Virus record (IMG/VR): IMGVR_UViG_3300037042_002125
Coordinates: 124,001 to 188,000 of that record
Length of the DNA: 64,000 nt
Direction: 5' to 3' (one strand)
Shown here: one piece after another, positions 22,408-63,684 of the stretch
Layout of the letters: each line of letters opens with the position of its first letter
How positions within the stretch are numbered: the first letter of the stretch is position 1
Notes under the pieces: generated by a model
Told to the model about the DNA's origin: nothing
Seen by the model: the letters and a program-made list of their open reading frames with translations, nothing else
Databases searched by the model: none
Position numbers and translations under genes: made by a program

Positions 22408-22415
22408 TATTTACA
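22408..22415 (-). promoter_or_regulatory. TGTAAATA motif (putative phage promoter)
   Basis: About 20 nt upstream of the MTase-GT start, in the sense orientation. Confidence 0.6.
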
Positions 22416-22428
22416 ATGTGGCATAGGC

Positions 22429-22442
22429 TAATTTAATTTAAT
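22429..22442 (+). promoter_or_regulatory. Two overlapping TAATTTAAT motifs
   Basis: TAATTTAATTTAAT upstream of the PKD remnant and endolysin. Confidence 0.5.
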
Positions 22443-22469
22443 TTATAATTATAAGTACAGATTTAATAA

Positions 22470-22640
22470 CCTAGTTCTGTAGGCGTAGTGTCAACTTGGA
22501 GTTGGGATTTTGGTGATTTGACTACGTCTACTCTTCAGAATCCAAGTCATACCTATAGTACCCCAGGAGTCTATTCTGTATATCTATTCCATGGTACTGG
22601 GTCAACCTTGTTCAAACCTCTTTTGATTACAGTGACTTAA
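22470..22640 (+). pseudogene. PKD (Ig-like) domain remnant with no clear start codon
   Basis: Manual translation [39 protein letters not shown]...TVT*; in-frame TAA TAA at 22464-22469 immediately upstream. Confidence 0.75.
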
Positions 22641-22666
22641 CCAAACAACCTTAGAGAGAAATAAAA

Positions 22667-23293
22667 ATGACCTCCTTTAATCTGATACCAAAATTGACGC
22701 TTGACCACGAAGACTTCGAAGCTTGCGCCAAGCTTTTGGGTTGTTCAGTAGACGCGGTTAAGGCAGTATCTCTTGTTGAGACAAACGGCGGCGGTTTCAA
22801 TCCAGATGGGTATCCTAAAACATTGTTCGAAGGTCACTACTTCTCTCGTTTGACTGATCACAGGTTCGACAAAGAATATCCAACTATTTCCTACCCCAAG
22901 TGGACAAAACAATTCTATTGCAAGAATTGGAAGGACGAACATGCAAGGTTGGTACTTGCCTCGACGTTAGATCAGGAGGCTGCTCTTAGGTCTGCGTCTT
23001 GGGGCATGTTCCAAATCATGGGTGACAATTACAAACTTTGCGGATTCTATGACGTAGTTCAGTTTGTAAATGCTATGTGTGAGGGGGCATCCCATCACTT
23101 AGAAGCTTTTACACACTACGTCATAAACCGACACCTCAACGACGAGCTACAAAATCTTGAGTGGGCAGACTTTGCACGTCAGTACAACGGACCAGGACAA
23201 GTAGCTGTATATAGCAAGCTTTTAAGTGATGCCTATGAGAAAATAGTACATGCGCCTGGCGCAGATCAGGAGGATGCCAAGAACGAAACTTAG
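22667..23293 (+). CDS. Endolysin, N-acetylmuramidase (DUF3380-like), catalytic domain only
   Basis: AV..VE..G.GF, LFEGHYF, SASWGMFQIMG.NY and FARQYNGP motifs. Confidence 0.88.
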   Translation: MTSFNLIPKLTLDHEDFEACAKLLGCSVDAVKAVSLVETNGGGFNPDGYPKTLFEGHYFSRLTDHRFDKEYPTISYPKWTKQFYCKNWKDEHARLVLASTLDQEAALRSASWGMFQIMGDNYKLCGFYDVVQFVNAMCEGASHHLEAFTHYVINRHLNDELQNLEWADFARQYNGPGQVAVYSKLLSDAYEKIVHAPGADQEDAKNET

Positions 23294-23302
23294 GATATTA
23301 CC

Positions 23303-23653
23303 ATGTCAAATCAAGATCAAAATCAAAAACCACCCCAGCAAGATCCATCATACACCTTCGCAAGAATTGCGTATGACCAGAATTGTATCTTTGTATTCAA
23401 TCGCAAATGCTTAAAGGCTAGTTCCGAAAATCTTTACGGTCTGACCTTAGGGTTTGCCTATGATTCCAAGGGCTACCCAATCTGCACAGCTGGCATTGAC
23501 ATACGAGAATTGCATAGACAAATGACGCAAGTTCTATTCGATGCACGTACTATTTATTTTTCAACAATTGACTCAATAGATCAGCGGTTAAAAACTCAAA
23601 TAGCTGACGCTGTCATAGCCTTCGATGCACAGGCAGCTGAACATGTCGAGTAG
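23303..23653 (+). CDS. Hypothetical protein
   Basis: 116-aa ORF with AGGA RBS. Confidence 0.6.
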   Translation: MSNQDQNQKPPQQDPSYTFARIAYDQNCIFVFNRKCLKASSENLYGLTLGFAYDSKGYPICTAGIDIRELHRQMTQVLFDARTIYFSTIDSIDQRLKTQIADAVIAFDAQAAEHVE

Positions 23654-25699: not shown

Positions 25700-25705
25700 T
25701 TTGAT
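25697..25705 (+). promoter_or_regulatory. TAATTTGAT motif upstream of the prohead protease
   Basis: Overlaps the upstream stop codon. Confidence 0.5.
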
Positions 25706-25742
25706 ATAACGTGCCTAGGAGCACAATTGATAAGGTTAGATC

Positions 25743-28642: not shown

Positions 28643-29692
28643 TTAAATGAGATTCTTTTTAACTTGGCGCAAAAACTTCTTGGGGCAGTTGAACGGGTCG
28701 TACTCCATCATCTTGGGACGCCCTTTGTCATCTAGTATTTCTCGTCCTTTCTTGTCCAACAATGGCTCTGCGTATTTCCACAGCGACATGTATTTGGTGT
28801 TGAAGTGCTGTTTGATGTCCTTGTAGATGACCTTGGTTGCAAGCTTACCTGCGTCGTCACCATCCATGAAGATGATTATGTTCTCTGCTCCAGTTTTTTC
28901 CAACTGGAACCGCTTAAGCTCATTCCAATTACCTGCACCTAACACTGCCATTGCAGGAATTCCAAATCGCAATAGCCGTATTACATCGCGCGGCCCTTCA
29001 CACAACACAATTGTTGACAAGTCCTTACGCTCCATCAACTCCACTGCGTAGTCATAGAACAGTAAACCATATTCTCGTGACCATTTGCCAGGTGCGTTGA
29101 TGTACGAAGGGGGTGTAACAGAGTAAAGCTCTCCTGTCTTAGGATCCTTCTTGACTACCTTATCTGGCTTCTCCAACTCTGCTTTAACGTAACCCCGCAG
29201 TTCGCCTTTGATTAGCACAGGCATGAACACGTAGAAGTTGTCGTTGTATTTCTTGTGAACAAACTCACAGCCTATCTTTGTCAAGAACGAACAAGGGATA
29301 GTACGCCACTCATCTTGAGTAAGATCAAAGAACTCTAGGTCGGCATGATCTCGCTCAAACCCCTCTTCTTCTTCATCATCGGTTTGATTCAACAGACCGT
29401 TTCTGTACGTAGATGGGTTGACGTAGTCCTCATCTGTCCTCTTCTTGTTGCTGTACTTGCGTAGGCCCAATGTGTCAGCTAAGTCGTCCCATGGAACAGA
29501 CTTCTTGCACGACCAACATCGGAACCACCCTAACGGTGCCCGTGCCTCTTCTAAATCCAAGTTGACGTTACCACTTGGGTTTGAGTCATTGTGATACGGA
29601 CAGACGATCTTGGCGCCTTGCCTTTCAATCTCTTTTATCTGTAGACTTGATATCTCTCCGAGTATAAAGTCTCTTTTCTTTTCATTGCTCAT
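28643..29692 (-). CDS. dnaG: DNA primase (Zn finger + TOPRIM)
   Basis: CPYH...C..C zinc finger; LCEGPRD and FMDGDDAG TOPRIM motifs. Confidence 0.88.
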   Translation of the reverse strand: MSNEKKRDFILGEISSLQIKEIERQGAKIVCPYHNDSNPSGNVNLDLEEARAPLGWFRCWSCKKSVPWDDLADTLGLRKYSNKKRTDEDYVNPSTYRNGLLNQTDDEEEEGFERDHADLEFFDLTQDEWRTIPCSFLTKIGCEFVHKKYNDNFYVFMPVLIKGELRGYVKAELEKPDKVVKKDPKTGELYSVTPPSYINAPGKWSREYGLLFYDYAVELMERKDLSTIVLCEGPRDVIRLLRFGIPAMAVLGAGNWNELKRFQLEKTGAENIIIFMDGDDAGKLATKVIYKDIKQHFNTKYMSLWKYAEPLLDKKGREILDDKGRPKMMEYDPFNCPKKFLRQVKKNLI

Positions 29693-29711: not shown

Positions 29712-29719
29712 TATTTACA
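29712..29719 (-). promoter_or_regulatory. TGTAAATA motif upstream of primase
   Basis: 19 nt upstream of the start codon, sense orientation. Confidence 0.6.
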
Positions 29720-29751: not shown

Positions 29752-29760
29752 TAATTTAAT
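29752..29760 (+). promoter_or_regulatory. TAATTTAAT motif
   Basis: In the divergent intergenic region. Confidence 0.45.
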
Positions 29761-29790: not shown

Positions 29791-29798
29791 TGTAAATA
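29791..29798 (+). promoter_or_regulatory. TGTAAATA motif upstream of the rightward operon
   Basis: 36 nt upstream of ATG 29835. Confidence 0.55.
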
Positions 29799-29834: not shown

Positions 29835-30182
29835 ATGATAGACGAAGTTGTTATCAGCAATCAGTTGCTTGCCAACTTGACCAACCTTGATGAGACCAAA
29901 AATTTCATCTTTGAGGTCTTAAACGAGTACATCCAAGGCTCGTATGCTCCATTGCAAAATGGAAGGATTGATGGAGGACGAGTTAAACGTCACCTCGAGT
30001 GTATGCTTGAGGACTCAATCAAGAAAAAGAACCCTACATTCAACAGCACCGTCCAGATAAATGTTGAATGGGGTCTGCGATCAGTGTGCGGATTCTCCTG
30101 CAGGATCTTTGTTGGCATATCTGATTTTGACTTAACCCCCTTTGGACACTCAGCCGTTGAGGCTGTTCCCCTATGGCAATAA
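29835..30182 (+). CDS. Hypothetical protein
   Basis: ATG 29835 with AGGAAGGA RBS. Confidence 0.6.
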   Translation: MIDEVVISNQLLANLTNLDETKNFIFEVLNEYIQGSYAPLQNGRIDGGRVKRHLECMLEDSIKKKNPTFNSTVQINVEWGLRSVCGFSCRIFVGISDFDLTPFGHSAVEAVPLWQ

Positions 30183-31222
30183 TAACATCAAGCACAACAA
30201 GACTTTCCAAAGCCATAGCAAAGGCTGATAAAGAAACAATAACAGGGACTGACAAAGGAAACGTAAGTAAGATCATACGGACGTTCAACACTTACCTAGA
30301 TTCCTACGAAGATAACTTTCAAGAGGAAGAAGTTGACCCAAAGCGGTACTTCTTCCTCCGTCCGTCTTCCTTCCCTTACTGCGGGTTCAAAAAACTCCTT
30401 AGTGCTCCTACAGATATTGATGCACCTCGCCTCAATACATTCGCGTCTACCTACTTTACTCAAATAGGTCACGCTACTCACGAAGTGTTTCAATTGTTCG
30501 GTGGGCGCGGTGGTAAGTTTGTAGGTGATTGGGTGTGCAACACTTGCGGTAATATCTCAAAGTTCACAACCGACAATATGTGTGAGTGTGGCTGCCCAAA
30601 GGGAATGAGCTATCTTGAGCTAGAGATACGCTACCGAGGGATCATACTAGGTCACATTGACGGGCTGTTCCGTCTTGATCCTAAGAAGGGTAACAAATCT
30701 GCCCACGTCTTAGTTGACTACAAGACAACCTCTAGCAAGAACGTTAAGCTTCCTGCTAAATCCTCTCCCTTCCCCTACAAGTACAACGTTGCCCAGATAG
30801 AAGCCTACGTCCCACTGATTGAAGAGCAGTATGGGGTAAACATCGACTACTGGTTACTAGCCTACCTAGCAAGAGATGCCCCTTTCAAATATGGTAGGGT
30901 ACTTCGCGCTAAGTATCTATCTGTAAATGATAAGGCAGCTATACTTAAAAAACTTGATCGTTGGGTCAAGACTCATAAGCTAGTCCTAACTGCCTCTACT
31001 ACTGAGGAATTCGAACGCATTGACAAGCGTAAGCTGTGCAAGAGTGCTCAGGACTACAAAGACAATTATAAGGAAGAATACAACGTGTGCCCATACGTCA
31101 AAGATTGCTTCACTAAACCAGAAATCTTGATCAAGAAGGCCCTCAAGCACAAGATCTTTCCAATCATAGACCATGCACCTAAAAAAGTTCAACGTTCACT
31201 AAGAGAAATAATACAATCATGA
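30173..31222 (+). CDS. Cas4-like / PD-(D/E)xK exonuclease
   Basis: RPSS..YC, G...HE, GHIDG, VDYKT and Q..AY motifs, C-terminal C...CPY..DC cluster; internal CxxC...CxC insert. Confidence 0.8.
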   Translation: MAIITSSTTRLSKAIAKADKETITGTDKGNVSKIIRTFNTYLDSYEDNFQEEEVDPKRYFFLRPSSFPYCGFKKLLSAPTDIDAPRLNTFASTYFTQIGHATHEVFQLFGGRGGKFVGDWVCNTCGNISKFTTDNMCECGCPKGMSYLELEIRYRGIILGHIDGLFRLDPKKGNKSAHVLVDYKTTSSKNVKLPAKSSPFPYKYNVAQIEAYVPLIEEQYGVNIDYWLLAYLARDAPFKYGRVLRAKYLSVNDKAAILKKLDRWVKTHKLVLTASTTEEFERIDKRKLCKSAQDYKDNYKEEYNVCPYVKDCFTKPEILIKKALKHKIFPIIDHAPKKVQRSLREIIQS

Positions 31223-36507: not shown

Positions 36508-37578
36508 ATGACAACCCCAACATCAACATCGTCTAGATCAGATCCAAAATCCCACCCAAAATCTTCAAATGGCAAGGCAACAATAAACAACTACAACCAC
36601 TCAAAGTTGTTTGCCAAGCTGAAATCAATTGAAGAGACTATACCAAACAATCTCACCTCCTATCAGTACCTAAGTGTCCTTGACGAATTGATCTACCGTG
36701 GTCTGTATCCTATAATTGAAGGTACAAAATTCTTCGAGAACTTCTTGGCACAGATTCTTGGGTGGCAAACAATAAATTCGAAGCGCAAGGTCGTTGGGGT
36801 TGGAAGACAGGCCTTTAGTTCATACACCACATTGTATCTTCTCCTTGATGACCCAAAGCAACGCATAAAGCTTATCAAGAAGATGAAGATTGATAGGGCG
36901 GTCTTATTTGAGGCAATGCGTAGGTGGACATCGATCTCAGAGGAAATAGTTTCTATATCTGAGACAGACGTAATAACCTCTGATGCCTTAACACAAATTG
37001 CAGACCTTAGCGAAAGGGCTTCAATACGAGATGGGTATCATGTGATAGCCCTTTACAATCAAGTACACTACTGGCATAACCAAGCAGTAGCTTTTAAATC
37101 TCAGATCTTAGAAAAGTACACTCGCCTGTGCCTTACCACTGCCCAACGTGATTACGTGCAGATGGATTGCCAGGGAGATTTAGATGACATAATTCAAGTT
37201 TACTTCATGAGCGCAGGCAAGGCCATTGATAAATGTGACACCGAGAAGGGTGTTCTTACCACACATATTCAAAACTGGCTGCTCAGCGCCAAGAACGTAG
37301 TCATAGCTACCTATGTAAACGGGGCAGTTACGCAAACCAAGGCAAGTACCGCAGGTGCTTCTATCATTCGTACAATGGTAGATCACGTTAGCCTAGATGA
37401 AATCGAAAACATGATTGCAGAGGAATTAGATGACCCAGCAGAAAAAGAAGAGACGGTCTATCAGGTACGGAAAGTAACACGCTTCTTTGACAAGACAGGT
37501 ATAGGTCGAATCCTTTTGGGCATACAAGACGTTCTATCAAAAGAAGATGTACAGGCACTGAGGGCTCACGCACTGTAA
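36508..37578 (+). CDS. Sigma-70-like phage transcription factor
   Basis: DLDDIIQ.....KAIDKCD.EKG.LTTHIQNW resembles sigma region 2.2-2.3. Confidence 0.6.
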   Translation: MTTPTSTSSRSDPKSHPKSSNGKATINNYNHSKLFAKLKSIEETIPNNLTSYQYLSVLDELIYRGLYPIIEGTKFFENFLAQILGWQTINSKRKVVGVGRQAFSSYTTLYLLLDDPKQRIKLIKKMKIDRAVLFEAMRRWTSISEEIVSISETDVITSDALTQIADLSERASIRDGYHVIALYNQVHYWHNQAVAFKSQILEKYTRLCLTTAQRDYVQMDCQGDLDDIIQVYFMSAGKAIDKCDTEKGVLTTHIQNWLLSAKNVVIATYVNGAVTQTKASTAGASIIRTMVDHVSLDEIENMIAEELDDPAEKEETVYQVRKVTRFFDKTGIGRILLGIQDVLSKEDVQALRAHAL

Positions 37579-37581
37579 ATA
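37574..37581 (+). promoter_or_regulatory. TGTAAATA motif upstream of the replication operon
   Basis: Overlaps the stop of the sigma-like gene. Confidence 0.55.
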
Positions 37582-37629: not shown

Positions 37630-38700
37630 ATGCAATTCTCAATCGACTCTGAACTACTGGGCGGCACAATCCGTACTTTGCAGCGTATAGCCCAAGCCGT
37701 TTCTATCTCACTTGAGGTCGCCAAGGGCAACGTTCTTATCACAGGCACTGGCAACGGGAACTCTTGTTCCATCAATTTGCCTTGCAAGATACTCGAGAAG
37801 TCCGCGCAAAACAAATTCAGCATTGCCGCTGAAACGTTAGCTAACGCAATTGCAAAACGCAAGGACATGAAGATCACAATCAAGGACACGTCCATTGAGC
37901 TGGCGAGTTCTCGGTATGCGGTTGAGCTCTTGATCAACCAGTTTGAACAGATTGAAGTTATCCCAGAAGCTGTCAAGCAAGACAAGAGCTTGAAGCTCAG
38001 TACAAAATTCCTTGATGCTATACGGGCCAACTTGAGCAAGATAGAGTTGAAGCCTTTGTTAAGTCTCTATGATTACATTCCTATTGGTATCAAGAGCACT
38101 GACGAAGGTACGTTTGTTGCTTGCTTTGATACTTGGCAGTCGGCGTTTTTCTTTGACAAAGAAGTTACTGGCAAACTAGAGTTCACGTTGCCTAGCAATA
38201 TCTTCATGACGATTGCCAAAGAGTTCAAGAACCAAAGCTACAAACTTTGCATCACCGACAGCACGGTATACGCCTACAATGATTTCTTTGAGTTGGGCAT
38301 TGCGCTGACGCAAACTGAAGGTGAGCAGGTTACGTTAGGTCACATGCTGGCTCTCTACAACAGTCTCAAGAAAGATAAAAGCGGCGTAAAGATCAAATTG
38401 AAGACAGAAGGCATAAACCAACTGATCGAAAATGCCAAAGCTGTCTACGAAAAGGATAGCACATTTACGTTCACTACCAAAGGTGACAAATGCAAACTTG
38501 TGCTCAAGAGTTCATTTGGCTCCATGAGCACGTTGGTCATGATGGAAGAAGCGCCCGCAAAGGACGTCAGCTTCTCTTGCGACTTCTCATTCTTTAGCAC
38601 ACTGCTTGCTAAAGCACCACCCACCCTTGAACTCAGAGTAAATGATAGGATGATGTTGTTTTCCAACAAGCCTGTCACGTACCTCTTGAGTCTGGTATAA
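37630..38700 (+). CDS. DNA sliding clamp, beta-clamp-like
   Basis: 356 aa, MQFSI..ELL start, three-domain alpha/beta periodicity, located in the replication operon. Confidence 0.65.
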   Translation: MQFSIDSELLGGTIRTLQRIAQAVSISLEVAKGNVLITGTGNGNSCSINLPCKILEKSAQNKFSIAAETLANAIAKRKDMKITIKDTSIELASSRYAVELLINQFEQIEVIPEAVKQDKSLKLSTKFLDAIRANLSKIELKPLLSLYDYIPIGIKSTDEGTFVACFDTWQSAFFFDKEVTGKLEFTLPSNIFMTIAKEFKNQSYKLCITDSTVYAYNDFFELGIALTQTEGEQVTLGHMLALYNSLKKDKSGVKIKLKTEGINQLIENAKAVYEKDSTFTFTTKGDKCKLVLKSSFGSMSTLVMMEEAPAKDVSFSCDFSFFSTLLAKAPPTLELRVNDRMMLFSNKPVTYLLSLV

Positions 38701-41238: not shown

Positions 41239-41858
41239 AAGAGCAAGAGGAAGATCCCCGTTTCAAGAACAGGGGCAAGTTGAAGATACGGCTTGCTGAA
41301 AAGTACATTACGATAATGAAGAACAGAGGTGTCAACGGTGGAGTGTTCAGACAGAACCCCTTTGTGTTGATGCCTACGTCCTTCACTTCCGACGTTGAGG
41401 GTCTCAAGCCCAAAGTGTTTAGCCGTCAGAAGCAGTTCGAGATGTTTGACAAGTTCATGGAGTCTCCTTTTGAGCCTATGAACTGTTGCATTGTATCTGC
41501 TCCTGATGACGGGAAGGCCAAGCTAATGGCAGCCTACATGATGCAGCACGCCATAGCCCAGCACAATAGCTACACGTCCTTGCCTATGTGGATTGATCTA
41601 ACTGGCGGCTTTGACAATCCGCTCGTTGTAAATAAAGTGAAGCCCTCCTTGCTTGTAATAAACAATGTAGGAGTAGCATCAACTCAATCCAAGATGGAAA
41701 AGCTTAGGGACATACTGGAAGTGTATAGTGACATACCGCGCATTGTAGTAGCAACTGGTTGTGACCCCTACTACTTCTTCATGCGTCACTTGTATCTGCC
41801 CATACACTCGCTGATGTACCTAACCAATTCATCTGTCAAAAAATCTATTGAACTCTGA
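41235..41858 (+). CDS. Degenerate DnaC/IstB-like helicase loader candidate
   Basis: Eroded P-loop (SAPDDGKA), LLVINNVG in place of LLILDD; directly upstream of DnaB. Confidence 0.4.
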   Translation: MKEQEEDPRFKNRGKLKIRLAEKYITIMKNRGVNGGVFRQNPFVLMPTSFTSDVEGLKPKVFSRQKQFEMFDKFMESPFEPMNCCIVSAPDDGKAKLMAAYMMQHAIAQHNSYTSLPMWIDLTGGFDNPLVVNKVKPSLLVINNVGVASTQSKMEKLRDILEVYSDIPRIVVATGCDPYYFFMRHLYLPIHSLMYLTNSSVKKSIEL

Positions 41859-43328: not shown

Positions 43329-43931
43329 ATGCTCATGGCTAACTTAACCAAAAAACCTTTACGAAGCTCTGGGGCTGCCTCGGCCGCCAGGGCTTTCTTG
43401 CCTCAGACAAAGGCCCCTAGTTCCATATGGGACAATGCAAAGCTATCTGACATTGGGAACAACTTTGAGATCATTAGGGAAGCGCCTATCCTCGAGGAGT
43501 ATTCTTTCCATAACCCTTTCCTAAGAGGGCAATCTGAGTTCATATTCTTTGTAGTTAAGCCTAAATACAAGGTCAAAGAGAAGAAGAAGGTAGTTACACC
43601 CTTAAACTTGAACAGCAAGTTGAGCAAACCTCAGAAGAGAAAGATAGCTAGAGCCATTGGCGATAACATTGAGGATTTTTCTACGTTCTTCATGGAGGAG
43701 ATTTTGCCAGTTAGTCTGGCAATATCGTCTGCTGGTCAGAAGGTAGACGAATTGATCCAACAATTGATAGACGATAAGGCAAACCTGCCAATGTCATTCA
43801 TCCAAGCTAAAGCTACGCAAGCCGTTTGCTTGCGGATCATTAGACGTATATCACAAAAGTTCAAGCTGACTAAAGACGAACAGCGTATGATGTTTAGGGA
43901 GTATCTACGTGAAAACGTTTTCAAAATCTAG
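43329..43931 (+). CDS. Hypothetical protein (possible terminase small subunit)
   Basis: Position immediately upstream of the large terminase only. Confidence 0.35.
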   Translation: MLMANLTKKPLRSSGAASAARAFLPQTKAPSSIWDNAKLSDIGNNFEIIREAPILEEYSFHNPFLRGQSEFIFFVVKPKYKVKEKKKVVTPLNLNSKLSKPQKRKIARAIGDNIEDFSTFFMEEILPVSLAISSAGQKVDELIQQLIDDKANLPMSFIQAKATQAVCLRIIRRISQKFKLTKDEQRMMFREYLRENVFKI

Positions 43932-46900: not shown

Positions 46901-47625
46901 CTAAAGTTGGTGAGTTGATAAACACTAGAGTTCAAGTGCAGGTGGCGGTTGAGATTCAGCCGCGACCAGGGGTAATGCTTCACTATAGCAAAATCTACAG
47001 TGACGTTATCAAACCAATGATAAAACATTTCAACGTCCGCTTCATGTTCGCAGATCGTTGGAATTCTGTTGCTTTATTAGACACAGCAGAAGAAGATTTC
47101 AAACACATTGGATTAGTCGCCAAGCAGCACAGTGTCAAGTACCCCGATTTCTTGACCACCAGGTCATATTTAGAGGAAGGTAAACTTATCCTTCCTAAAC
47201 TTGAAATGGAATATGAGAAGATTCGACAAATTGATAGCTACCCCTCTTATTTTGAAGGTAAGCCAGCCGCTCATCTATTGTTCCAGTTTGCCACTGTACG
47301 TGATATGGGTAGTACAGTTATCAAAGGTGGACCTTACACAGATGACATTTTTAGGGCCTTGGTTCTAGGTGTAGGTCGTATTCTCAATCCGAAGATCATG
47401 GAAGAGATTCTAAAGATGGGAGTTGTCCTCAACCAAAGGAATTTCGGTGCCGTAACAATGGGGAGATCTTTTGGTATGTCTAGTCCAATAAACTACCTTG
47501 CGAATAGGGACCCGTCTAAACCCAATGTAGGTTCTACAATCCTATCTGGGTATTCTACTATTAGTCCTGTTGGGGGTTCTAACTTTGCAACCTCACAAGT
47601 TGTAAGAAGTTCTAGGACAAGGTAG
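43909..47625 (+). CDS. terL: Terminase large subunit with intein
   Basis: GTG start with AGGGAG RBS; WGQRSGKS Walker A; Walker B reconstituted as RFL/TGLDE; RNase H-like nuclease motifs (SMDAG, ADRW, TDDIFRA). Confidence 0.88.
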   Translation: MKTFSKSSSGSGIILPHFASKSKNYVDSLFNNPGSASLPWEAFPDDYDPLDLIAADGEFDLAKMMDKAVDSITGLPRDIRLPEGDFPEAKNYFDYCENFVGPDTKFPFSRQMWAAIHLLAEYCPRCSHPKWENIFNVGVDVDPRNIPNNVRLLHYGKCPKCKTTKAELFANKELNLYVEAAWLWGQRSGKSILTASLTNYLLHKYLKFPKMSAICEGIQSSTPLTATFVGVRFADAIATLWEPITKGIHDSPWFREYHAMMDQYGTKLGIEFYRFKDQYLKYGHKNLEIYPAGPSKRALRGRTRFLCLTGDTLVNTDRGLVEIKNNLQGQSVDVYMTKNADITYHAYSGKKEVFEVTLGNGLSVTGSSVHPLLTLDLETYKPKWTKIENLTVNDYVVCGLGGTFPDELTLPSGDLPSKAKYEVAIEEMVKRKTFYLADITKVCGLSPNVLSITTCQYTRLGLLTKRKMSQTGTSLFSVAKGVTVNQLLAAKKKGSQRITQNRNKTQFPLSMTTELASVLGYLVADGKYTEQGFAQELGFGTTSILKAEDFAAKFQDTFGCAPRRRTGYKSDVKLGKVYGCRIAYSAVKDFLKTIGLVPAVAKTKEVPWSILQADRDSVVAFLSSAISCDGRVPNTFNKGLGRTVSYTSTSLKLLQQMQILFFKLGYPCHIKQNTDGTSKVVLKAYTASKFLDEYTGLEKRDWHINRERTVRRNSMSYSEYRIPGLELRNTSMVYFVHTLKELNAHSRINTSGLGHLIDKNFVFSKAKTIKSKGVKKTYDISVDSKSHAFVANGIVVHNTGLDELGWFPISGENRDLERADADEVHTALDRSLLTMRREVRTLYRKGYSNFIPGIAINISSPADETDKMCRLVEENRSSTRVLALQLATWEISPLFTKDNEEIADAYSKNPIDAERDYGAKPPMNARSFMDMSVAARGFNGRNAAHVTPFEKTINEKVRRAAALDSWSPSTPQPASVLSMDAGLTNNSFAITIMNLNQTKVGELINTRVQVQVAVEIQPRPGVMLHYSKIYSDVIKPMIKHFNVRFMFADRWNSVALLDTAEEDFKHIGLVAKQHSVKYPDFLTTRSYLEEGKLILPKLEMEYEKIRQIDSYPSYFEGKPAAHLLFQFATVRDMGSTVIKGGPYTDDIFRALVLGVGRILNPKIMEEILKMGVVLNQRNFGAVTMGRSFGMSSPINYLANRDPSKPNVGSTILSGYSTISPVGGSNFATSQVVRSSRTR
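44827..46302 (+). mobile_element. Intein (492 aa) with LAGLIDADG homing endonuclease
   Basis: Starts CLTGDTLV, ends ANGIVVHN followed by Thr; LGYLVADG and FLSSAISCDG motifs. Confidence 0.93.
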
Positions 47626-56139: not shown

Positions 56140-56175
56140 GTGTAAATTGTTTTCAACGCCTACAAAGGACAAATC

Positions 56176-56790
56176 ATGCTAATGCTGTTGCAAAAGACTT
56201 TCATGGATGACACAGGTACGCCATATGCGAATTACCCTGTTGTTATCACTGAGTGTGGTTCAAACAATCCTGTTCGCCTGTACACCCAATCAGGGTTGTT
56301 GATGGAACGTTTTGGAAATACAAAAACAGATTCAGACGGAATCATTTCTGTGTATGTGTCAGATGAAAAATTCTATGGCGCAAATCTTTTTAATCCCTCA
56401 AACGGGTTGAAGGTACAAAGTGTATACCGTCTTGACGTTGGTAATGGCGCTGACGTTCGCGTTGGCCCAACTGGCGCAGCCTCTACTGTTACTGGACCTA
56501 CAGGACCGTCTGTCACAGGACCGTCTGTCACAGGTCCCACTGGCGCAGCCTCTACTGTTACTGGACCTACAGGACCGTCTGTCACAGGACCGTCTGTCAC
56601 AGGTCCCACTGGTGCTGACTCAACTGTTCCTGGACCTACAGGTCCTCAAGGTGACTCGTTGACGGGACCCACTGGTGCTGACTCGTCAGTCACGGGACCT
56701 ACAGGTGCCGCAGGCAACGATGGGGCTACTGGCCCGACCGGTGCAGACGGTGTGGCTGGCCCAACAGGCCCAACAGGCGCAGCACCCTGA
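56176..56790 (+). CDS. Small collagen-like (GPT-repeat) virion-type protein
   Basis: ~95-aa beta-rich N-domain, then [18 protein letters not shown] repeats; exact 69-bp tandem repeat at 56470-56612. Confidence 0.8.
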
Positions 56791-56808: not shown

Positions 56809-56883
56809 CTAGGTGGGGTGCAGTTAACTACTGTACTCCACCTTTGTGCGTTATTTGTCGTATACCAACTCAGGAACAATATC

Positions 56884-57747
56884 ATGTCTATACAGGCTTT
56901 ACAGAGAGATGCTGAAGAAGCTTCTTTAAGTCATGGCAGACTGACTGTTGACTCAAGTTCTGGTATCACCCTTCCTCCAGACATAAAATTCAAAACACCT
57001 TTTGCGTTCTGCAAGATATCCCAAGGCAGCACGTTCAAGATGAAATACCTATCTGAGAGGTGGCACTTCTTTAACAAGGAGTTGTTTGGTGGGTCAATGA
57101 CAGAGCCAAAGTTGATTATAACCAAGGCATTTAAGCACATGAAGACCTTGGGGTTCTGGAGACCTTACACAAAAGAGTTATCCATACATCATAAGCTTTT
57201 CACTCTTGATAGTGACAAACAAATTTTAGGTACCCTTGTGCATGAAATGGCACATGAGTACGATTCTGATATCTTGCAAACCCCAATTAGAGAGCGAATG
57301 ATCAAAAAGGGTCATGGTCCTAGCTGGGACGGTATCATGCGGTCTATTGGTCTGCCTGCAGATGCAATGTTTGCAGGGGACTCTGACGAATTGATTGATG
57401 AAGAACAAAAAGAAAATTTGAATATTCGTAGGGGTAAAATCGAGTCACATAACCAAATAACACCCGCGTCCTTTGACGGCAAGCCTTACATACCAGTTAT
57501 GTTCATCAAGGGCAGCGGGACCTTGGAGCCAATGCTACTCCTAGATTCTCAGCTTGTACATGGCGATCCTAATTCAAGCTACAGAGGGTTTACTAAGAAA
57601 GACTTACGGACAGGTTCTTGCTGGTACGTAGACATAGATAACTGTCTTAAGCCTACATCTGCTCAACTTAAAAAGTTCCCTCCTGAGTTTGACACTATAC
57701 GCACTCTTGAGATAGTTAACTACACGTATGAACGGTATAAGCCTTGA
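56884..57747 (+). CDS. SprT-like zinc metalloprotease
   Basis: N...F.G N-motif, TLVHEMAH and HGPSW motifs. Confidence 0.8.
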   Translation: MSIQALQRDAEEASLSHGRLTVDSSSGITLPPDIKFKTPFAFCKISQGSTFKMKYLSERWHFFNKELFGGSMTEPKLIITKAFKHMKTLGFWRPYTKELSIHHKLFTLDSDKQILGTLVHEMAHEYDSDILQTPIRERMIKKGHGPSWDGIMRSIGLPADAMFAGDSDELIDEEQKENLNIRRGKIESHNQITPASFDGKPYIPVMFIKGSGTLEPMLLLDSQLVHGDPNSSYRGFTKKDLRTGSCWYVDIDNCLKPTSAQLKKFPPEFDTIRTLEIVNYTYERYKP

Positions 57748-58280: not shown

Positions 58281-59957
58281 ATGTCCAAAAAAGCTTTTTC
58301 TCGTATCGCAACACTGGCTCGCGTAAAGCCGAAAAGCTTAGATAGTTTCATCTACCTTCTGTATGCAGCATCTGCAGTATTGGCAAAAGACGAGACATTG
58401 CCTAAGCTGGCACAGAACGTCACAGCTAAAGCAAAAGACGCGGCAGAGGTAGATGCAGAGCTTGGAACTAAAATTGTCCCAATGTTGGTTAAGATCGTTA
58501 AGTCAAACGACTATGATGAAGAAGAGCTGTCTAAAGATGTTCGCGAACTGAGAAAAGCAATTCGGCGTGACGTTGATACTGATGCACAGGTCAACCATGA
58601 TCACATTGATATGCTAAAGGCCCTTACTGCCTACATATCAAGCCGTGCTGAAGGTGCTCTGCGTAAGTTAATCAGCTTGGCTCCCCTTACCGAGGCAAAC
58701 GAGCTTATAGATGCTTTGACATTCAAGCCAAACTCGCAAAAGGAATTTCTCAAACCACTCGAAAAGATTGTCAATGCGTTTCACCGCAAGGGTACTACAC
58801 TTACTTCCGAAGAGCAGAAAGTACTCAAAGTCAAGTCTCCGAAGGTGCATAAGGAATATCTGCGGCTTCGCAAGGAGTTCAACAACGTCTGGAAAGATGA
58901 GCTACGCAACCTTATTAACAAGGCAGGTCGGCCAATGACTGACTTCCAGTATGCCCTTGACTACTTGAAAAGCCAAGGCATACATAATCCTTTGCCGCCA
59001 GATTTTGAGGGTAACGTAGATGCCAACGGCAAGTTCTATACCAAGACAGGCAAGCTAATTGCTAACGTACCTGGTGTAGGCTTCAAGATCGTAATGAATC
59101 CGGATTACGATCCCAAAGAAGATAACACCTACGTGTTTACTACTGTCAATGCCGAAGGAAAGGTAAGCCAGCATGTCTACACTACCGAGTACCGCAAGAA
59201 GACAACAGACGTTAAGTTCAAGAAGGTAGACGAGCTAGACGCTGTTATTGATAGCGTCCGCAAGAAGTGGATGAAATACGTCAAACAAGGTGGATCAAGT
59301 GTTCAGGCTGTAGCCAGCACGGTATTAGAGTTGATCTATCAATTTAGTGCTCGTGTAGGTTCAATGGGTAATTCTACTGCTGGTCAAGACACTTATGGCA
59401 TAAGCACGTTGCTATACAAGCAAGTCAAAGCAGGAAAGACTGGTATTCTTATAAAGTACCCAGGTAAGAAGGGCGTTGTCCAGTCTCACCTGTTGCAAGG
59501 CTCTACCGTTGAAGCTAAGTGGTTGATCCGTAACATTAAAGAATGTCTTGTTGATAAAGACCCAACAGACAGAGTGTTTACGTTTGATAACAACGGTAAA
59601 TTGTACCCAGTAACAGGCAATATATCTAACAAGTGGTTTGCCAAACTGGGTTCACCCGTTACAGTACACAAACTTAGGCACGTCAAAGGATCTAGATTGT
59701 TTGCCCAAGAGATTGCTGACAATGACAAGGTTATAAACAACCCCAACAAGCCGTTGAACCAATCTCAAGCAGATGCGTTGTTCAAACAAATGGCTACTAA
59801 GGTAGGTGAGTTGTTAGGTCACGTTACTGGCATTGGTAAACAACAGAAAGTTACGCCAATGACTGCGGTGCAGAACTACATATCACCTGCACTAATGATT
59901 GGTTACTATCAAAGACTCAATTTGAGACCGCCAAAGTTCTTGTCCAAATTTGAGTAA
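58281..59957 (+). CDS. DNA topoisomerase IB with long N-terminal extension
   Basis: Catalytic residues in order: ARVG (R), YGISTL, GKKG (K), HKLRH (R,H), QNYI (Y). Confidence 0.85.
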   Translation: MSKKAFSRIATLARVKPKSLDSFIYLLYAASAVLAKDETLPKLAQNVTAKAKDAAEVDAELGTKIVPMLVKIVKSNDYDEEELSKDVRELRKAIRRDVDTDAQVNHDHIDMLKALTAYISSRAEGALRKLISLAPLTEANELIDALTFKPNSQKEFLKPLEKIVNAFHRKGTTLTSEEQKVLKVKSPKVHKEYLRLRKEFNNVWKDELRNLINKAGRPMTDFQYALDYLKSQGIHNPLPPDFEGNVDANGKFYTKTGKLIANVPGVGFKIVMNPDYDPKEDNTYVFTTVNAEGKVSQHVYTTEYRKKTTDVKFKKVDELDAVIDSVRKKWMKYVKQGGSSVQAVASTVLELIYQFSARVGSMGNSTAGQDTYGISTLLYKQVKAGKTGILIKYPGKKGVVQSHLLQGSTVEAKWLIRNIKECLVDKDPTDRVFTFDNNGKLYPVTGNISNKWFAKLGSPVTVHKLRHVKGSRLFAQEIADNDKVINNPNKPLNQSQADALFKQMATKVGELLGHVTGIGKQQKVTPMTAVQNYISPALMIGYYQRLNLRPPKFLSKFE

Positions 59958-59977
59958 TAAGACTTGACGTTGCAATA

Positions 59978-60022: not shown

Positions 60023-60032
60023 GCTTTTCTTG

Positions 60033-60286: not shown

Positions 60287-60287
60287 G

Positions 60288-60650: not shown

Positions 60651-60663
60651 GGTGTAGGTTCTC

Positions 60664-61356: not shown

Positions 61357-61373
61357 TGTTATCCTTGTTTAGA

Positions 61374-62294
61374 TTAGGCCATTGAGGCGTATAGATGCAT
61401 TTGGAGACACAGCCGGTAGCCCATATGCAAGGCGTAGTTGGCAGCGTACTCATGGTTTATTTGGTTCTCTTTCTGGTTGAGCAACCCTGGTGTCCAGAAA
61501 CTAATCACTTCGTCTACAGTAGAACGCTCATGCAGGCTAGGTGTGTATGTACCGTCTGCACCCTTCTTTGTAAGCCGCAGGATTTTCGACTGTTGTGGCA
61601 CATCGTTGTAGATGTTCATTGGGGATATATAGATTTCCCTGCCAGTGCGAGCCTTCCATTCTTGAGCCCATTGAGGTACGTTCCAGTACGGGCTGTCAAA
61701 ATCTTGCTTGACAACGAATTTCAAACACTGAACAGAATCTAGAACCTTATCGTTTGGTTTGAGGTACTCAGTAGGTACACCATTCTTCTCGCCACACTTG
61801 GGACTACATACAAACGTAACAAAGTCTGGCACTCTCGTGTTGAGCAAACCATTGCTTTCGATTTGGACATGCTTGTATGCAAACTGTTGCCGCATCAAGA
61901 ACTCATACAAGTTATCTTGCAGCAAAGGCTCTCCACCAGTGACGACCAATATGCAGCCGTAAGGCCCAAGCTTTCTGTCAAACTTTGTTTCCTTATCAAA
62001 GCTCTTAGGCAATACCCAAAGAGGTGCAGGAGTCCCGCCTTCATTCCAGTGATCGCATATGGTAGCGTAGGCTTTCGCCTCTATTTGCTCGTAGGTAAGC
62101 CAGTCACCTTGGTCAAAGAACGTGTCGCAGAAGTGACAATTGAGATTGCACTTAGCAAGACGTATGAACAAGGCAGGCATTCCTGCATAAGGTCCCTCGC
62201 CTTGTATTGTGAAAAACATGCTCGTCACGTACAGGGAATTCGCGGGTGCGTCTTTGAAGAACTTCTTGCCAGTTATTTCGTTAGTTCCAAACAT
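61374..62294 (-). CDS. queE: 7-carboxy-7-deazaguanine synthase (radical SAM)
   Basis: FFTIQGEGPYAG, CNLNCHFCDT, TGGEP, ESNG, SPK and QMH motifs. Confidence 0.93.
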   Translation of the reverse strand: MFGTNEITGKKFFKDAPANSLYVTSMFFTIQGEGPYAGMPALFIRLAKCNLNCHFCDTFFDQGDWLTYEQIEAKAYATICDHWNEGGTPAPLWVLPKSFDKETKFDRKLGPYGCILVVTGGEPLLQDNLYEFLMRQQFAYKHVQIESNGLLNTRVPDFVTFVCSPKCGEKNGVPTEYLKPNDKVLDSVQCLKFVVKQDFDSPYWNVPQWAQEWKARTGREIYISPMNIYNDVPQQSKILRLTKKGADGTYTPSLHERSTVDEVISFWTPGLLNQKENQINHEYAANYALHMGYRLCLQMHLYASMA

Positions 62295-62302
62295 GGTTCA
62301 TC

Positions 62303-63103
62303 CTATACAGCATCTTTGCTTGTCTCATATCGACCCTCAAATGCCTTGAGAGAGTTTGCAAGGGCGATCTCGTAGTTGTCACTTAGCCACTGTTTGATCG
62401 TTGCCAGATCAGGCGGCGTGGTTTGTTTGTCCAACCAGGCAGTAAGGAAGTAGTTGTCTTGGTTAGCCCCATCCCACAGCTTGAGATACCGATCTACGGC
62501 ATAGTACCCATACTTGAACGTACCTGCCTTGTACCCTTTGTCTTGGCGGAATTGATTCAGCAAAGCCTTTGCCATGTAGCGGGTGTAGAGGTTACGCAAG
62601 TCAAAGTCAATTGATCTTGAAAGGCTGAACAACAAAGACCAAGGGTTAAGGCCAAGCAACCCGTGTGCTTCCACGTACTCACTTGCGCTGTTCAAATTCA
62701 GGCTAGCCATTAGCATCTTTGCCAAAGACAAAGTCTTAACTTTATCCACAGACAAATCTGCAGACATTTGAAGGCTTCGGTAGATGCTCTCAATTGCTTC
62801 ATCGGCGTCTTGGCTATCAATCACTGATTGGCTGAGCATGAAGTGAACTGCGTCTACTATCTCCATTTTGCAGTTACCTAGGTCTTGCTTATCTCCTGAC
62901 CACCACTCGTAGCCGTAGCTGTTAACGAACTCACCGATCTCTTGAGAGGCTGCTAGGCTGTAATCAAACTCCTGGGTGCGGCCTTTGTTAAGCCAATCCT
63001 CGTTGTAGGCTTTGGTGTTCAAAGCAATCTGGTTAAATACCATTTCACGTATCATCGAATACGCTGGTGAGGTTTTGAAATCTTCGCCGAAGAGGTTAAC
63101 CAT
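62303..63103 (-). CDS. Dimeric (all-alpha) dUTPase family
   Basis: EIGE, WW, MEIVDAVHF, Y.AK..LN.FRQDKGY motifs. Confidence 0.8.
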   Translation of the reverse strand: MVNLFGEDFKTSPAYSMIREMVFNQIALNTKAYNEDWLNKGRTQEFDYSLAASQEIGEFVNSYGYEWWSGDKQDLGNCKMEIVDAVHFMLSQSVIDSQDADEAIESIYRSLQMSADLSVDKVKTLSLAKMLMASLNLNSASEYVEAHGLLGLNPWSLLFSLSRSIDFDLRNLYTRYMAKALLNQFRQDKGYKAGTFKYGYYAVDRYLKLWDGANQDNYFLTAWLDKQTTPPDLATIKQWLSDNYEIALANSLKAFEGRYETSKDAV

Positions 63104-63105
63104 GG

Positions 63106-63648
63106 TCAGTCCTTGTTGGTGTTTGAGATAAATGAGCTACGGCTCTTTGGAGTCTCCCACCAATCGACACGAGAGCAGGTAACCCCCAAAGCCTTCATCT
63201 TTATTGAGACTAAAGTGTGCATCCACTTTGCAAAATTCTCGCTCGTTGGTACAAAGTCTACAACTAGCATACCACCATACAGCTCTTGCAATAAAGGGGA
63301 CATTGAATCGTTTTCAACAGTCCATGCTACCTCCACTCCTTCCAGCTCTACTGGTTGTAATCTAGATGTTTCTGGGAATAGAATTAACCTTAGTGGATCA
63401 TTTCTGTCAATGACAAACTTGTGATCAATAAAAGTATTTAGCCACTTCTTAAGCCACTCCAAGTGCCTAAAATCTGTAACCATACCTCGCACCAACGTGT
63501 CTGAGCTTAAAAAGACTTGAACTTTTGCTTCATGGCCGTGCAGATGCCTACAGGCGCATTTCAAGTCTTCTGAAAATCTACCGTCTAATTCTTGACTCCA
63601 AACTCTATGGCCATAACAGAACTCAAAAGTCTTATCAATGTTGAACAT
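63106..63648 (-). CDS. queD: 6-carboxy-tetrahydropterin synthase
   Basis: F.YGHR, C..LHGH, DF, DH.F, PTSEN and WET motifs. Confidence 0.93.
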   Translation of the reverse strand: MFNIDKTFEFCYGHRVWSQELDGRFSEDLKCACRHLHGHEAKVQVFLSSDTLVRGMVTDFRHLEWLKKWLNTFIDHKFVIDRNDPLRLILFPETSRLQPVELEGVEVAWTVENDSMSPLLQELYGGMLVVDFVPTSENFAKWMHTLVSIKMKALGVTCSRVDWWETPKSRSSFISNTNKD

Positions 63649-63670
63649 GGTTTCTTCCTTTATATCAATG

Positions 63671-63684
63671 TAATTTTATTTACA
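63671..63684. promoter_or_regulatory. Overlapping divergent motifs: TAATTTTAT (+, 63671-63679) and TGTAAATA (-, 63677-63684)
   Basis: Divergent gap between queD and the next ORF. Confidence 0.55.

What the first reader, a model, noticed from the sequence alone, without database searches (positions are those of the whole stretch)
22408..63684. TGTAAATA box oriented toward non-structural operons on both strands
Seen: exact copies at 22408(-), 29712(-), 29791(+), 37574(+), 56801(+) and 63677(-). They sit upstream of the GT operon, primase, nuclease operon, clamp/helicase operon, SprT/TopIB operon and deazaguanine operon, always in sense orientation. I also saw copies inside CDSs (3823, 54307). 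It differs from T4 late TATAAATA by one base, yet precedes replication and metabolic genes. Inference: an early/middle phage promoter class.
Basis: partly seen in the sequence, partly recalled or inferred. Interest (0 to 1): 0.6.

Follow-up and report, generated by a model that had tools for sequence, protein, structure and literature searches.

The report
Jumbo-phage middle-gene promoter box TGTAAATA
TGTAAATA is a real, conserved promoter-like box that sits in front of the DNA-replication and nucleotide-metabolism operons of a 222-kb jumbo phage related to Ralstonia phage RSL1 and Pseudomonas phage Lu11; the same box is already annotated as a putative promoter in Lu11, so it is a well-supported new example of a known kind, not a new kind of element.

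Summary
The window has 10 exact copies against 2.65 expected. The whole 222-kb phage has 32 copies, and 15 of them lie in the 2.5% of positions just upstream of a same-strand gene (P about 3e-16).

The box is conserved at the same places in three metagenomic relatives with 39-57% GC. More distant cultured relatives carry variants before the same genes: RSL1, BcepSauron and Motura have GTAAATA, and Lu11 has AAACTGTAAATA. The Lu11 GenBank record already calls this box a "putative middle/late promoter".

No -35 element accompanies the box. The genes it precedes are primase, clamp, helicases, SSB, DNA polymerase, nuclease, dTMP kinase, and deazaguanine and sugar enzymes. A second box, TAATTTAAT, precedes portal, protease, tail fibres and endolysin. 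A few canonical sigma70-type promoters precede other operons, including the one that encodes a second sigma-like protein.

I read TGTAAATA as the middle promoter class of a three-tier programme, used by host core RNA polymerase with a phage sigma. Which of the two phage sigma-like proteins reads it is unresolved. No start-site data exist: no RNA run was listed.

The parts
22408..22415 (-). TGTAAATA box, 20 nt before the start of the glycosyltransferase gene 20789-22387
   Evidence: gene family
29712..29719 (-). TGTAAATA box, 19 nt before the primase gene 28643-29692; left arm of a divergent 142-bp intergenic region
   Evidence: conserved in L010 (4518-) and L011 (5201-); Lu11 has the box before its primase
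29791..29798 (+). TGTAAATA box, 36 nt before ORF 29835-30182, which opens the operon holding the nuclease (30173-31222), the 5'-3' exonuclease and, farther on, the sigma gene
   Evidence: conserved in L010 (4596+) and L011 (5238+, TGTAAATT); RSL1 has GTAAATA before its Cas4-like nuclease ORF170
37574..37581 (+). TGTAAATA box overlapping the stop codon of the sigma gene, 48 nt before the beta-clamp-like gene 37630-38700; helicase and DnaB follow
   Evidence: same place in L010, L011 and L012; RSL1 has GTAAATA before its clamp-like ORF157; clamp homology E 2e-23
56141..56148 (+). One-base variant TGTAAATT, directly after a TAATTTAAT box, 33 nt before the tail-fibre-like gene 56182-56790
   Evidence: the same tandem arrangement occurs in L011
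56801..56808 (+). TGTAAATA box before the SprT-like gene (56884-57747) and TopIB (58281-59957); a strong hairpin follows it
   Evidence: RSL1 has GTAAATA before ORF107, the gene just upstream of its TopIB
56812..56845 (+). 14-bp-stem hairpin starting 3 nt after the box (dG -29.7 kcal/mol with flanks, z -6.5). It may be a terminator of the upstream operon or a 5' stem-loop of the new transcript
63677..63684 (-). TGTAAATA box, 28 nt before QueD 63106-63648; dUTPase, a radical-SAM (QueE-like) gene and GTP cyclohydrolase I follow
41627..41634 (+). Intragenic sense copy inside the 207-aa DNA-polymerase-like gene, 285 nt before DnaB. Status uncertain: internal promoter or coding coincidence
   Evidence: kept in L010 with changed flanking third-codon bases but absent from L011 and L012
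36508..37578 (+). Phage sigma factor 'sigma-I'. It has regions 1.2, a non-conserved region and region 2 like primary sigma70, and no recognisable region 4. Candidate reader of one of the two phage boxes
   Evidence: phrog_17569 E 3e-43; weak Sigma70_r2 hit; no Sigma70_r4 hit; profile against PDB; AlphaFold model residues 28-277 match E. coli sigma70 94-456, Z 12-15
29752..29760 (+). TAATTTAAT box, the contrasting presumed late class, in the same intergenic region, 30 nt upstream of the 29791 box. Other copies in the window: 9264, 22429/22434, 25697 (TAATTTGAT), 36027 (TTAATTTCAT), 47628 and 56131, all on the + strand
   Evidence: invariant in own, L010 and L011; genes behind these boxes are tail fibre, endolysin, head protease, portal and tail-fibre-like

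Best explanation
TGTAAATA is the single-box, -10-like core of a phage-specific promoter class without a -35 element. It drives the 'middle' operons of a jumbo phage of the RSL1/Lu11 lineage: replication, recombination, nucleotide metabolism, and deazaguanine and sugar modification of DNA.

Inferred mechanism:
1. Host sigma70 holoenzyme first transcribes a few operons that have canonical TTGACA-N17-TGnTATAAT promoters.
2. Those operons supply a phage sigma-like factor. It redirects host core RNA polymerase to TGTAAATA boxes, with transcription probably starting 5-8 nt downstream of the box.
3. A third box, TAATTTAAT, then switches on head, tail, portal, protease and endolysin genes.

What is shown: the box exists, it is enriched and oriented, it is conserved at orthologous positions, it has no -35 partner, it separates by gene class from the other two promoter types, and two sigma-like genes are present.

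What is inferred: that the box is a promoter, its timing, the start-site position, and the identity of the factor. My split for the factor is about 0.4 for the early-expressed second sigma-like protein (genome 53948-55057, minus strand, outside the window), about 0.35 for the 36508 sigma, and about 0.2 for host sigma70 with a phage modifier.
For: - Enrichment and orientation.
- Divergent primase/nuclease intergenic region: one box faces each gene, and only these boxes plus TAATTTnAT stay conserved among three phages.
- Same box before the same genes in relatives spanning 39-58% GC. The gene after sigma has it in L010-L012. The SSB gene has it in RSL1, BcepSauron, Motura, PaBG, NCTB, Lu11 and this phage. 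The clamp, Cas4-like nuclease, thymidylate synthase and dCMP deaminase genes of RSL1 have it.
- GTAAATA or TGTAAAT is the top upstream 7-mer in this phage, in Lu11 and in RSL1, each analysed independently.
- The Lu11 GenBank record marks these sites as 'putative middle/late promoter'.
- Distance to the start codon varies (5-101 nt, median 45), and there is no information content upstream of the box.
- Gene classes separate: TGTAAATA goes with replication and metabolism, and TAATTTAAT goes with virion and lysis genes. RSL1 shows the same split with AATTTGAT.
- Sigma-I lacks region 4, which fits promoters without a -35 element.
- A second sigma-like protein has sigma2-like and sigma4-like domains, occurs in the same phages as sigma-I, and lies behind a conserved sigma70-type promoter in this phage, in L058 and L059, and in RSL1.
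- A TAATTT-type box precedes the sigma-I gene pair in this phage, L010, RSL1, BcepSauron and Motura. This fits sigma-I as the late factor with positive feedback.
Against: - No transcription start site or expression timing is available for this phage; no RNA run was listed. No paper in the searched library describes the box.
- Several boxes are followed within 1-10 nt by strong hairpins, some of them terminator-like (window 56812; genome 80364, 207508, 217385). That is an unusual place for a promoter. In RSL1 the box sometimes sits in the loop of a perfect inverted repeat.
- The box does not match a sigma70 -10 hexamer, and the expected A(-11)/T(-7) register cannot be assigned.
- Gene-class separation is not absolute. 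TGTAAATT precedes a tail-fibre-like gene (56141). The clamp/helicase transcription unit runs without a large gap into terminase. The giant helicase has TGTAAATA here but AATTTGAT in RSL1.
- Some replication genes (clamp loader, dCMP deaminase) lie behind sigma70-type promoters instead.
- The second sigma-like protein is supported only by middling structural Z scores (7-10) and has no sequence-family hit.
Confidence: 0.7

Rival explanations
1. The box acts in RNA (UGUAAAUA in the 5' leader) as a processing, stability or translational-operator signal. The true promoters lie elsewhere.
For: The box is strand-specific and lies in leaders, as an RNA signal would. Strong hairpins directly follow several copies. 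In RSL1 the box can sit in a hairpin loop. Ten sense against three antisense copies inside genes would also fit an RNA-level signal.
Against: - In the divergent primase/nuclease region the minus-strand box is the only conserved element upstream of primase. No other candidate promoter is conserved there in three phages.
- Distance to the start codon is highly variable, 5-101 nt, which argues against a translational operator.
- The box is confined to first genes of operons of one functional class.
- In Lu11 a further conserved GTA lies 4 nt downstream, where a start site would be expected.
Confidence: 0.1
2. The box is an operator for a phage DNA-binding regulator (activator or repressor) that modulates nearby promoters. 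It is not itself the element a sigma factor reads.
For: It is an 8-12 bp conserved box with no second element. It often lies next to the other box (29752/29791, 56131/56141; genome 70811/70836 and 31537/31550). Phages of this group carry several predicted transcription factors (PMC7824862; Lu11_0140 is annotated 'putative transcriptional regulator').
Against: - Most boxes have no other conserved promoter-like element nearby.
- The box is asymmetric and strictly oriented with the gene, whereas most operators are dyads.
- Its spacing to start codons matches that of the presumed late box, as expected if both are core promoters.
Confidence: 0.1
3. The box is a T4-type late promoter (a TATAAATA relative) read by a gp55-like factor and coupled to replication.
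For: It differs from TATAAATA by one base, has no -35 element, and a clamp-like gene lies next to the sigma gene.
Against: The genes behind the box are replication and metabolism genes. Virion and lysis genes carry TAATTTAAT instead. TATAAATA itself occurs only 4 times in the genome. The G at position 2 is kept in this phage and in RSL1, BcepSauron, Motura, Lu11, PaBG and NCTB. The sigma resembles sigma70 regions 1.2 to 2; no gp55 comparison was made.
Confidence: 0.03
4. The copies are a chance or base-composition effect in AT-rich intergenic DNA.
For: Intergenic DNA is AT-rich, and four window copies inside genes are about the chance number.
Against: TGTAAATA ranks first of 280 same-composition words, with 15 upstream copies against a mean of 0.375. 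It is conserved at orthologous sites across 39-58% GC genomes.
Confidence: 0.01

Closest known systems
'Putative middle/late promoter' features of Pseudomonas phage Lu11 (GenBank JQ768459; 16-nt sites beginning CTGTAAAT)
   Same: The core is the same, CTGTAAAT(A/G). Lu11 has 48 copies against 6 for the control word. The sites lie before the same kinds of genes (primase, topoisomerase/gyrase, DNA polymerase I, the sigma operon, SSB/RecA). Neither phage has a -35 element. Both encode a homologous sigma factor.
   Different: Lu11's box is longer and more uniform: AAACTGTAAATA, then four free bases, then GTA. In this phage only the sites at genome 69-107 kb carry the AAAC prefix and a GTG/GTA about 4 nt downstream; the window's sites keep just the 8-mer. 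The sigma proteins are only about 22% identical. The Lu11 sites are predictions too. The genome announcement was not held in the library.
GTAAATA upstream box of Ralstonia phage RSL1, Burkholderia phage BcepSauron and Achromobacter phage Motura (found here; I know of no published description)
   Same: GTAAATA is the top upstream 7-mer in RSL1, with 20 of 35 copies upstream. It lies before the SSB, clamp, Cas4-like nuclease, thymidylate synthase and dCMP deaminase genes. A separate AATTTGAT box precedes virion genes.
   Different: The leading T is not conserved (GCAGTAAATAG). Those genomes are GC-rich and TGTAAAT itself is rare in them.
Phage T4 late promoters (TATAAATA, read by gp55 with gp33 and the gp45 clamp)
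   Same: Both are single 8-bp AT-rich -10-type boxes without a -35 element, and they differ by one base. Both are read (here presumably) by host core polymerase with a phage sigma-like protein.
   Different: The gene class is opposite: replication and metabolism here, virion genes in T4. The G at position 2 is conserved. The candidate sigma resembles sigma70 regions 1.2 to 2 in fold; gp55 itself was not searched for. The T4 details rest on general knowledge (Geiduschek and Kassavetis review, from memory).
Extended -10 (TGn) bacterial promoters and the -35-independent middle/late promoters of Thermus phage P23-45
   Same: Both have a TG dinucleotide at the upstream edge of an AT-rich box, and both are independent of a -35 element.
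   Different: The TG abuts the hexamer with no spacer, and the hexamer (TAAATA) lacks the conserved T at -7. True extended -10 promoters (TGTTAYAAT) exist in this phage as a separate class. The P23-45 comparison is from memory, not tested.

Membership tests
Lu11-type phage promoter box (CTGTAAAT...) | Core sequence CTGTAAAT(A/G) on the coding strand | tested here: met
   The TGTAAATA core is exact. C at -1 occurs in 11 of 25 upstream sites and the full AAAC prefix mainly at genome 69-107 kb.
Lu11-type phage promoter box (CTGTAAAT...) | Located in intergenic DNA just upstream of operons, in sense orientation | tested here: met
   15 of 32 copies lie in 2.5% of the position space, P 3e-16.
Lu11-type phage promoter box (CTGTAAAT...) | Occurs before orthologous genes (primase; the gene after sigma; SSB) | tested here: met
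Lu11-type phage promoter box (CTGTAAAT...) | Phage encodes the lineage's sigma factor | tested here: met
   Window 36508-37578 matches phrog_17569 at E 3e-43. tblastn finds Lu11, PaBG, RSL1 and others.
Bacterial sigma70-family promoter (functional definition) | A primary transcript 5' end lies a few nt downstream of the element | not testable with these tools
   No RNA run was listed for the window, and no start-site data were found in the searched library.
Bacterial sigma70-family promoter (functional definition) | -10 hexamer of TATAAT type with A(-11) and T(-7), usually with a -35 TTGACA | tested here: not met
   There is no -35 information, and TAAATA or GTAAAT matches TATAAT at only 3 of 6 positions. 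Canonical sigma70 promoters are a separate set in this genome.
T4 late promoter | Sequence TATAAATA | tested here: not met
   G at position 2 is strongly preferred: TATAAATA has 4 copies in the genome and only 1 in intergenic DNA.
T4 late promoter | Precedes late (virion, lysis) genes | tested here: not met
   It precedes replication and metabolism genes; virion and lysis genes carry TAATTTAAT.
T4 late promoter | Read by gp55 with gp33 and the sliding clamp | not tested
   I made no dedicated search for gp55 or gp33 homologues. The candidate sigma has a sigma70 region 1.2-to-2 fold.

The most novel reading that the evidence does not exclude
The RSL1/Lu11 jumbo-phage lineage runs a conserved three-tier transcription cascade. 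Host sigma70 promoters come first, then TGTAAATA, then TAATTTAAT. The last two tiers would be driven by two different phage sigma-like proteins, each reading a single-box promoter without a -35 element. One factor is a truncated primary-sigma look-alike (regions 1.2 to 2, no region 4). The other has a sigma2 plus sigma4 architecture and is made early from a host-type promoter. In this reading TGTAAATA is read by the early factor, not by the annotated sigma. Neither the cascade nor the promoter specificities have been described experimentally for this lineage, as far as the searched library shows.
Probability: 0.35. Interest if true: 0.65.

Novelty: new member of a known kind. Interest (0 to 1): 0.45.

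Why it matters
Phages of this lineage encode no RNA polymerase of their own; a comparative study reports this for the group (PMC7824862). They must therefore reprogramme the host enzyme, and how they do so is untested. This analysis gives a concrete promoter map: a middle box, a late box and host-type early promoters. It also names two candidate sigma-like proteins. Because the boxes are conserved in cultured relatives (Lu11, RSL1), the predictions can be tested there directly. The box also helps to annotate operons and gene timing in uncultured relatives. Short promoters with no -35 element and a matching factor could become orthogonal expression parts.

Tried and rejected
- A nucleotide search of 20 kb of the window against 50,697 phage records found nothing. 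The phage is known only from metagenomes.
- The search for related loci with the sigma protein in viral contigs found no relatives. The word-based protein search was needed instead.
- The closest relative's contig (P0004) had no DNA on file.
- The look-up of sequencing runs listed no RNA run (my first attempt was one base over the length limit). Read laying was therefore not used, and no start-site test was possible.
- Literature searches for the word, the lineage and promoters found no description of the box. The Lu11 announcement is not held.
- TGTAAAT is not enriched in RSL1, BcepSauron, Motura, PaBG or NCTB. This first looked like non-conservation. Reading the intergenic DNA upstream of the SSB genes showed one-base variants, and GTAAATA proved to be RSL1's top upstream word.
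- A weak second Sigma70_r2 hit at genome 51963-52076 is a 91-aa ORF with no convincing features. I dropped it.
- I looked for a fixed -35 partner for either box and found none.
- TTAAATTA upstream of two window boxes first looked like a -35-like element. Its spacing varies (15, 32, 36 nt) and it is the reverse strand of the TAATTTAA box, so I rejected that idea.
- The idea that promoter-initiated transcripts escape the 56812 hairpin by starting inside its 5' arm is weak. A transcript starting at 56815 still folds a 10-bp stem.
- Complex prediction was not used, because no specific protein pair was claimed to bind.

Full report
**Context.** The window is bases 124,001-188,000 of a 222,078-bp IMG/VR virus record (about 93% complete, 46% GC). 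There is no nucleotide match among 50,697 phage records. Protein matches place the phage with the jumbo myoviruses Ralstonia phage RSL1, Burkholderia phages BcepSauron and BcepSaruman, Achromobacter phage Motura, Pseudomonas phages Lu11 and PaBG, and phage NCTB, at 20-31% identity for the sigma factor. Many metagenomic relatives sit at 40-85% identity.

**Observation.** That makes 10 copies against 2.65 expected, and none of 100 shuffles reached 10. The six intergenic copies each point at the next gene and lie 19-75 nt before its start.

- glycosyltransferase, primase, PD-(D/E)XK nuclease, SprT-like, TopIB and QueD;
- dUTPase, radical SAM and GTP cyclohydrolase I behind QueD;
- the 37630 protein is a full-length homologue of RSL1 ORF157, annotated 'beta clamp domain-like' (E 2e-23).

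Genome-wide there are 32 copies, against 9 for the reversed word. Fifteen lie in the 2.5% of strand-specific positions within 150 nt upstream of a start (binomial 3e-16). Ten lie inside genes in sense and three in antisense. The word ranks first among all 280 words of the same composition. It is also the most enriched upstream 7- or 8-mer. Single-base variants are far rarer. Only TGTAAATT is also mainly intergenic, with 6 of 11 copies there.

**Conservation.** I fetched three metagenomic relatives around their sigma genes: L010 (74% identity, 39% GC), L011 (56%, 47% GC) and L012 (52%, 57% GC). Each has TGTAAAT(A/T) just before the clamp-like gene downstream of sigma. L010 and L011 also have it on both strands of the primase/nuclease divergent spacer. 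In an alignment of that spacer, only the two outward-facing boxes and a central TAATTTnAT survive.

In distant cultured relatives the spacer before the SSB gene holds these variants:
- RSL1: GCAGTAAATAG
- BcepSauron: TAGTAAATA
- Motura: TCGTAAATA
- PaBG: CTGTCAATA
- NCTB: CTGTAAAA
- Lu11: AAACTGTAAATG

This phage's own SSB gene (genome 201270-202706, minus strand) has TGTAAATA 45 nt upstream. An unbiased upstream k-mer count gives the same family as the top word in three genomes: TGTAAAT here, CTGTAAA/TGTAAAT in Lu11, and GTAAATA in RSL1, where 20 of 35 copies are upstream. The Lu11 GenBank record already annotates these sites as 'putative middle/late promoter'. So the element class is not new, although I found no paper that describes or tests it.

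**Anatomy.** There is no information content between -45 and -6 relative to the box, so there is no -35 element. Distance to the start codon runs from 5 to 101 nt, median 45. In Lu11 the box extends to AAACTGTAAATA, then four free bases, then GTA. In this phage the sites at genome 69-107 kb share the AAAC prefix and a GTG/GTA about 4 nt downstream, whereas the window's sites keep only the 8-mer. The conserved G-T-purine lies where a start site would fall if the box is a -10-like element.

Several boxes are followed by strong hairpins. After 56801 there is a 14-bp stem (dG -29.7 kcal/mol, z -6.5). This is the main oddity for a promoter reading.

**Three promoter-like classes.**
- TGTAAATA precedes primase, nuclease/exonuclease, the clamp-helicase-DnaB unit, SSB, the 1087-aa DNA polymerase, a 1527-aa helicase, dTMP kinase, a weak queuine tRNA-ribosyltransferase (DpdA)-like match (E 5e-4), a UDP-glucose-dehydrogenase-like gene, glycosyltransferases, SprT and the Que operon.
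- TAATTTAAT (consensus gTAATTTaAT, also without a -35 element) precedes a tail fibre (9294), a head protease (25743), the portal (47930), a tail-fibre-like protein (56182), a weakly head-closure-like protein (E 7e-4), a Holliday-junction resolvase and, at longer range, the endolysin (22667). The equivalent words are TAATTTAA in Lu11 and AATTTGAT in RSL1. In RSL1, 19 of 25 copies are upstream, before TopIB, the connector region, sheath, tail fibre and a giant helicase.
- Canonical sigma70-type promoters form a small third set. Examples are TTGACA-N17-TGCTATAAT at genome 797-825 and TGTTAYAAT sites at genome 58135, 73592 and 81400.

The T4 late word TATAAATA occurs only four times.

**Factors.** The protein at 36508 is a phage sigma factor (phrog_17569, E 3e-43). 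Its profile matches SigA regions 2 to 3.0. Its AlphaFold model (pLDDT 79) superposes residues 28-277 on E. coli sigma70 residues 94-456, covering region 1.2, a shortened non-conserved region and region 2 (Z 12-15). After that comes a disordered acidic stretch and three short low-confidence helices. No region 4 is detectable. This suits a promoter that consists of a -10-type box alone.

A second candidate lies outside the window at genome 53948-55057 (minus strand). It is homologous to PaBG gp112 (tblastn 4e-7), which the PaBG paper tentatively called a second sigma (PMC7412058). Its model (pLDDT 72) aligns residues 130-220 with sigma domain 2 (sigma28 1rp3, Z 9.9, rmsd 2.8 over 86 residues) and residues 283-369 with domain 4. 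Nearly all of the top 50 matches are sigma factors. The Z scores are only middling, and no sequence family matches. This protein occurs in the same phages as the first sigma.

Its operon is preceded by a conserved host-type promoter in this phage and in two relatives (TAAACA, TTTACA or TTGACA at the -35 position, then TGTTATAAT or TGTTATACT) and by TTTACT-N17-TATACT in RSL1. By contrast, the first sigma and the conserved 136-aa gene before it are preceded by a TAATTT-type box in this phage, L010, RSL1, BcepSauron and Motura. They also lie downstream of the 29791 TGTAAATA box.

**Interpretation.** The simplest model is a cascade. Host sigma70 transcribes early operons, including the one for the second sigma-like protein. 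TGTAAATA operons follow, covering replication, metabolism and the first sigma. TAATTTAAT operons come last, covering virion and lysis genes and giving feedback on the first sigma. In this model TGTAAATA is read by the second factor.

That cannot be excluded: the protein lacks region 4, and its gene sits among TGTAAATA operons. But it would need another source for its first expression. I put the promoter-class reading at about 0.7 and leave the factor open.

The RSL1 paper reported two transcription patterns by microarray. This is my recollection of its abstract, the paper was not held, and I use it only as a lead.

**Rivals.** An RNA-level signal or a regulator's operator each keep about 0.1. 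The hairpins, and the RSL1 cases where the box sits in a hairpin loop, are what keep them alive. A T4-type late promoter and chance are effectively excluded.

**Limits.** Gene calls outside the tool's ORF list come from my own codon-usage caller, and some start codons are uncertain. No experimental data were available. All statements about timing are inferred from gene content.

Noticed in passing
window 9264, 22429/22434, 25697, 29752, 36027, 47628, 56131 (all +); genome-wide 14 copies of TAATTTAAT: A second conserved upstream box, gTAATTTaAT, also lacks a -35 element. It precedes tail-fibre, endolysin, head-protease, portal and tail-fibre-like genes, and the gene pair ending in the sigma factor. 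The equivalents are TAATTTAA in Lu11 and AATTTGAT in RSL1. It is probably the late promoter class.
   Followed up: partly
genome 53948-55057 (-), i.e. L047:13948-15057:-, outside the window: A 369-aa protein, homologue of PaBG gp112 and RSL1 ORF011. Its predicted fold has a sigma2-like and a sigma4-like domain joined by a disordered linker. It occurs in the same phages as the annotated sigma and lies next to a small topoisomerase-like gene.
   Followed up: partly
genome 797-825 (+), 58135 (-), 73592 (-), 81400 (-); L058 and L059 near 1800-1830; RSL1 about 3040-3070: Canonical host-type promoters (TTGACA-N17-TGnTATAAT) are conserved in relatives and often followed by ...ACGG. They are probably the earliest class. 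The one at genome 58135 heads the operon with the second sigma-like gene.
   Followed up: partly
genome 69717-106713 versus the rest: Most upstream TGTAAATA sites at genome 69-107 kb (9 of 11) carry the prefix AC, usually as AAAC or GAAC, and many have GTG/GTA about 4 nt downstream, like Lu11. Elsewhere only 2 of 14 sites carry the AC prefix. This may mark a stronger or earlier subclass. The genes behind these sites are mostly small and of unknown function.
   Followed up: partly
window 43909-47625 (+): The terminase large subunit gene is interrupted by an intein with a LAGLIDADG homing-endonuclease domain (Pfam Intein_splicing and LAGLIDADG_3; phrog_17415 matches in three pieces).
   Followed up: no
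window 11060-18991 (+): A 2643-aa ORF lies in a stretch of 51-57% GC, against about 44% around it. I did not analyse its function.
   Followed up: no
window 22388-22666: An unusually long (279-bp) divergent intergenic region lies between the glycosyltransferase and endolysin genes. It holds tandem TAATTTAATTTAATTTA repeats next to the 22408 box. It may be a regulatory hub.
   Followed up: no
RSL1 (NC_010811) 44797 and 195473: In RSL1 some GTAAATA boxes sit exactly in the loop of perfect inverted repeats (for example a 10-bp stem on either side). I have no explanation. It could be a terminator and promoter packed together, or a structured signal.
   Followed up: no
genome 57494-57601 (-); L058 2429-2538; L059 2357-2506: A conserved hairpin followed by GGGGTATA, with no U-tract, lies between the first and second genes of the early operon in three phages. 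It may be an RNA processing or regulatory structure.
   Followed up: no
window 32342 (+); L010 6844; L011 7297: TGTAAATG is conserved inside the 5'-3' exonuclease gene in three phages. It reads Val-Asn-Glu in frame, so it is probably kept by protein constraint.
   Followed up: partly
L058 1541-1777; L059 1451-1690: Relatives carry a small Hfq-like gene (weak Pfam hit) next to a ThyX-type thymidylate synthase gene in the early region.
   Followed up: no
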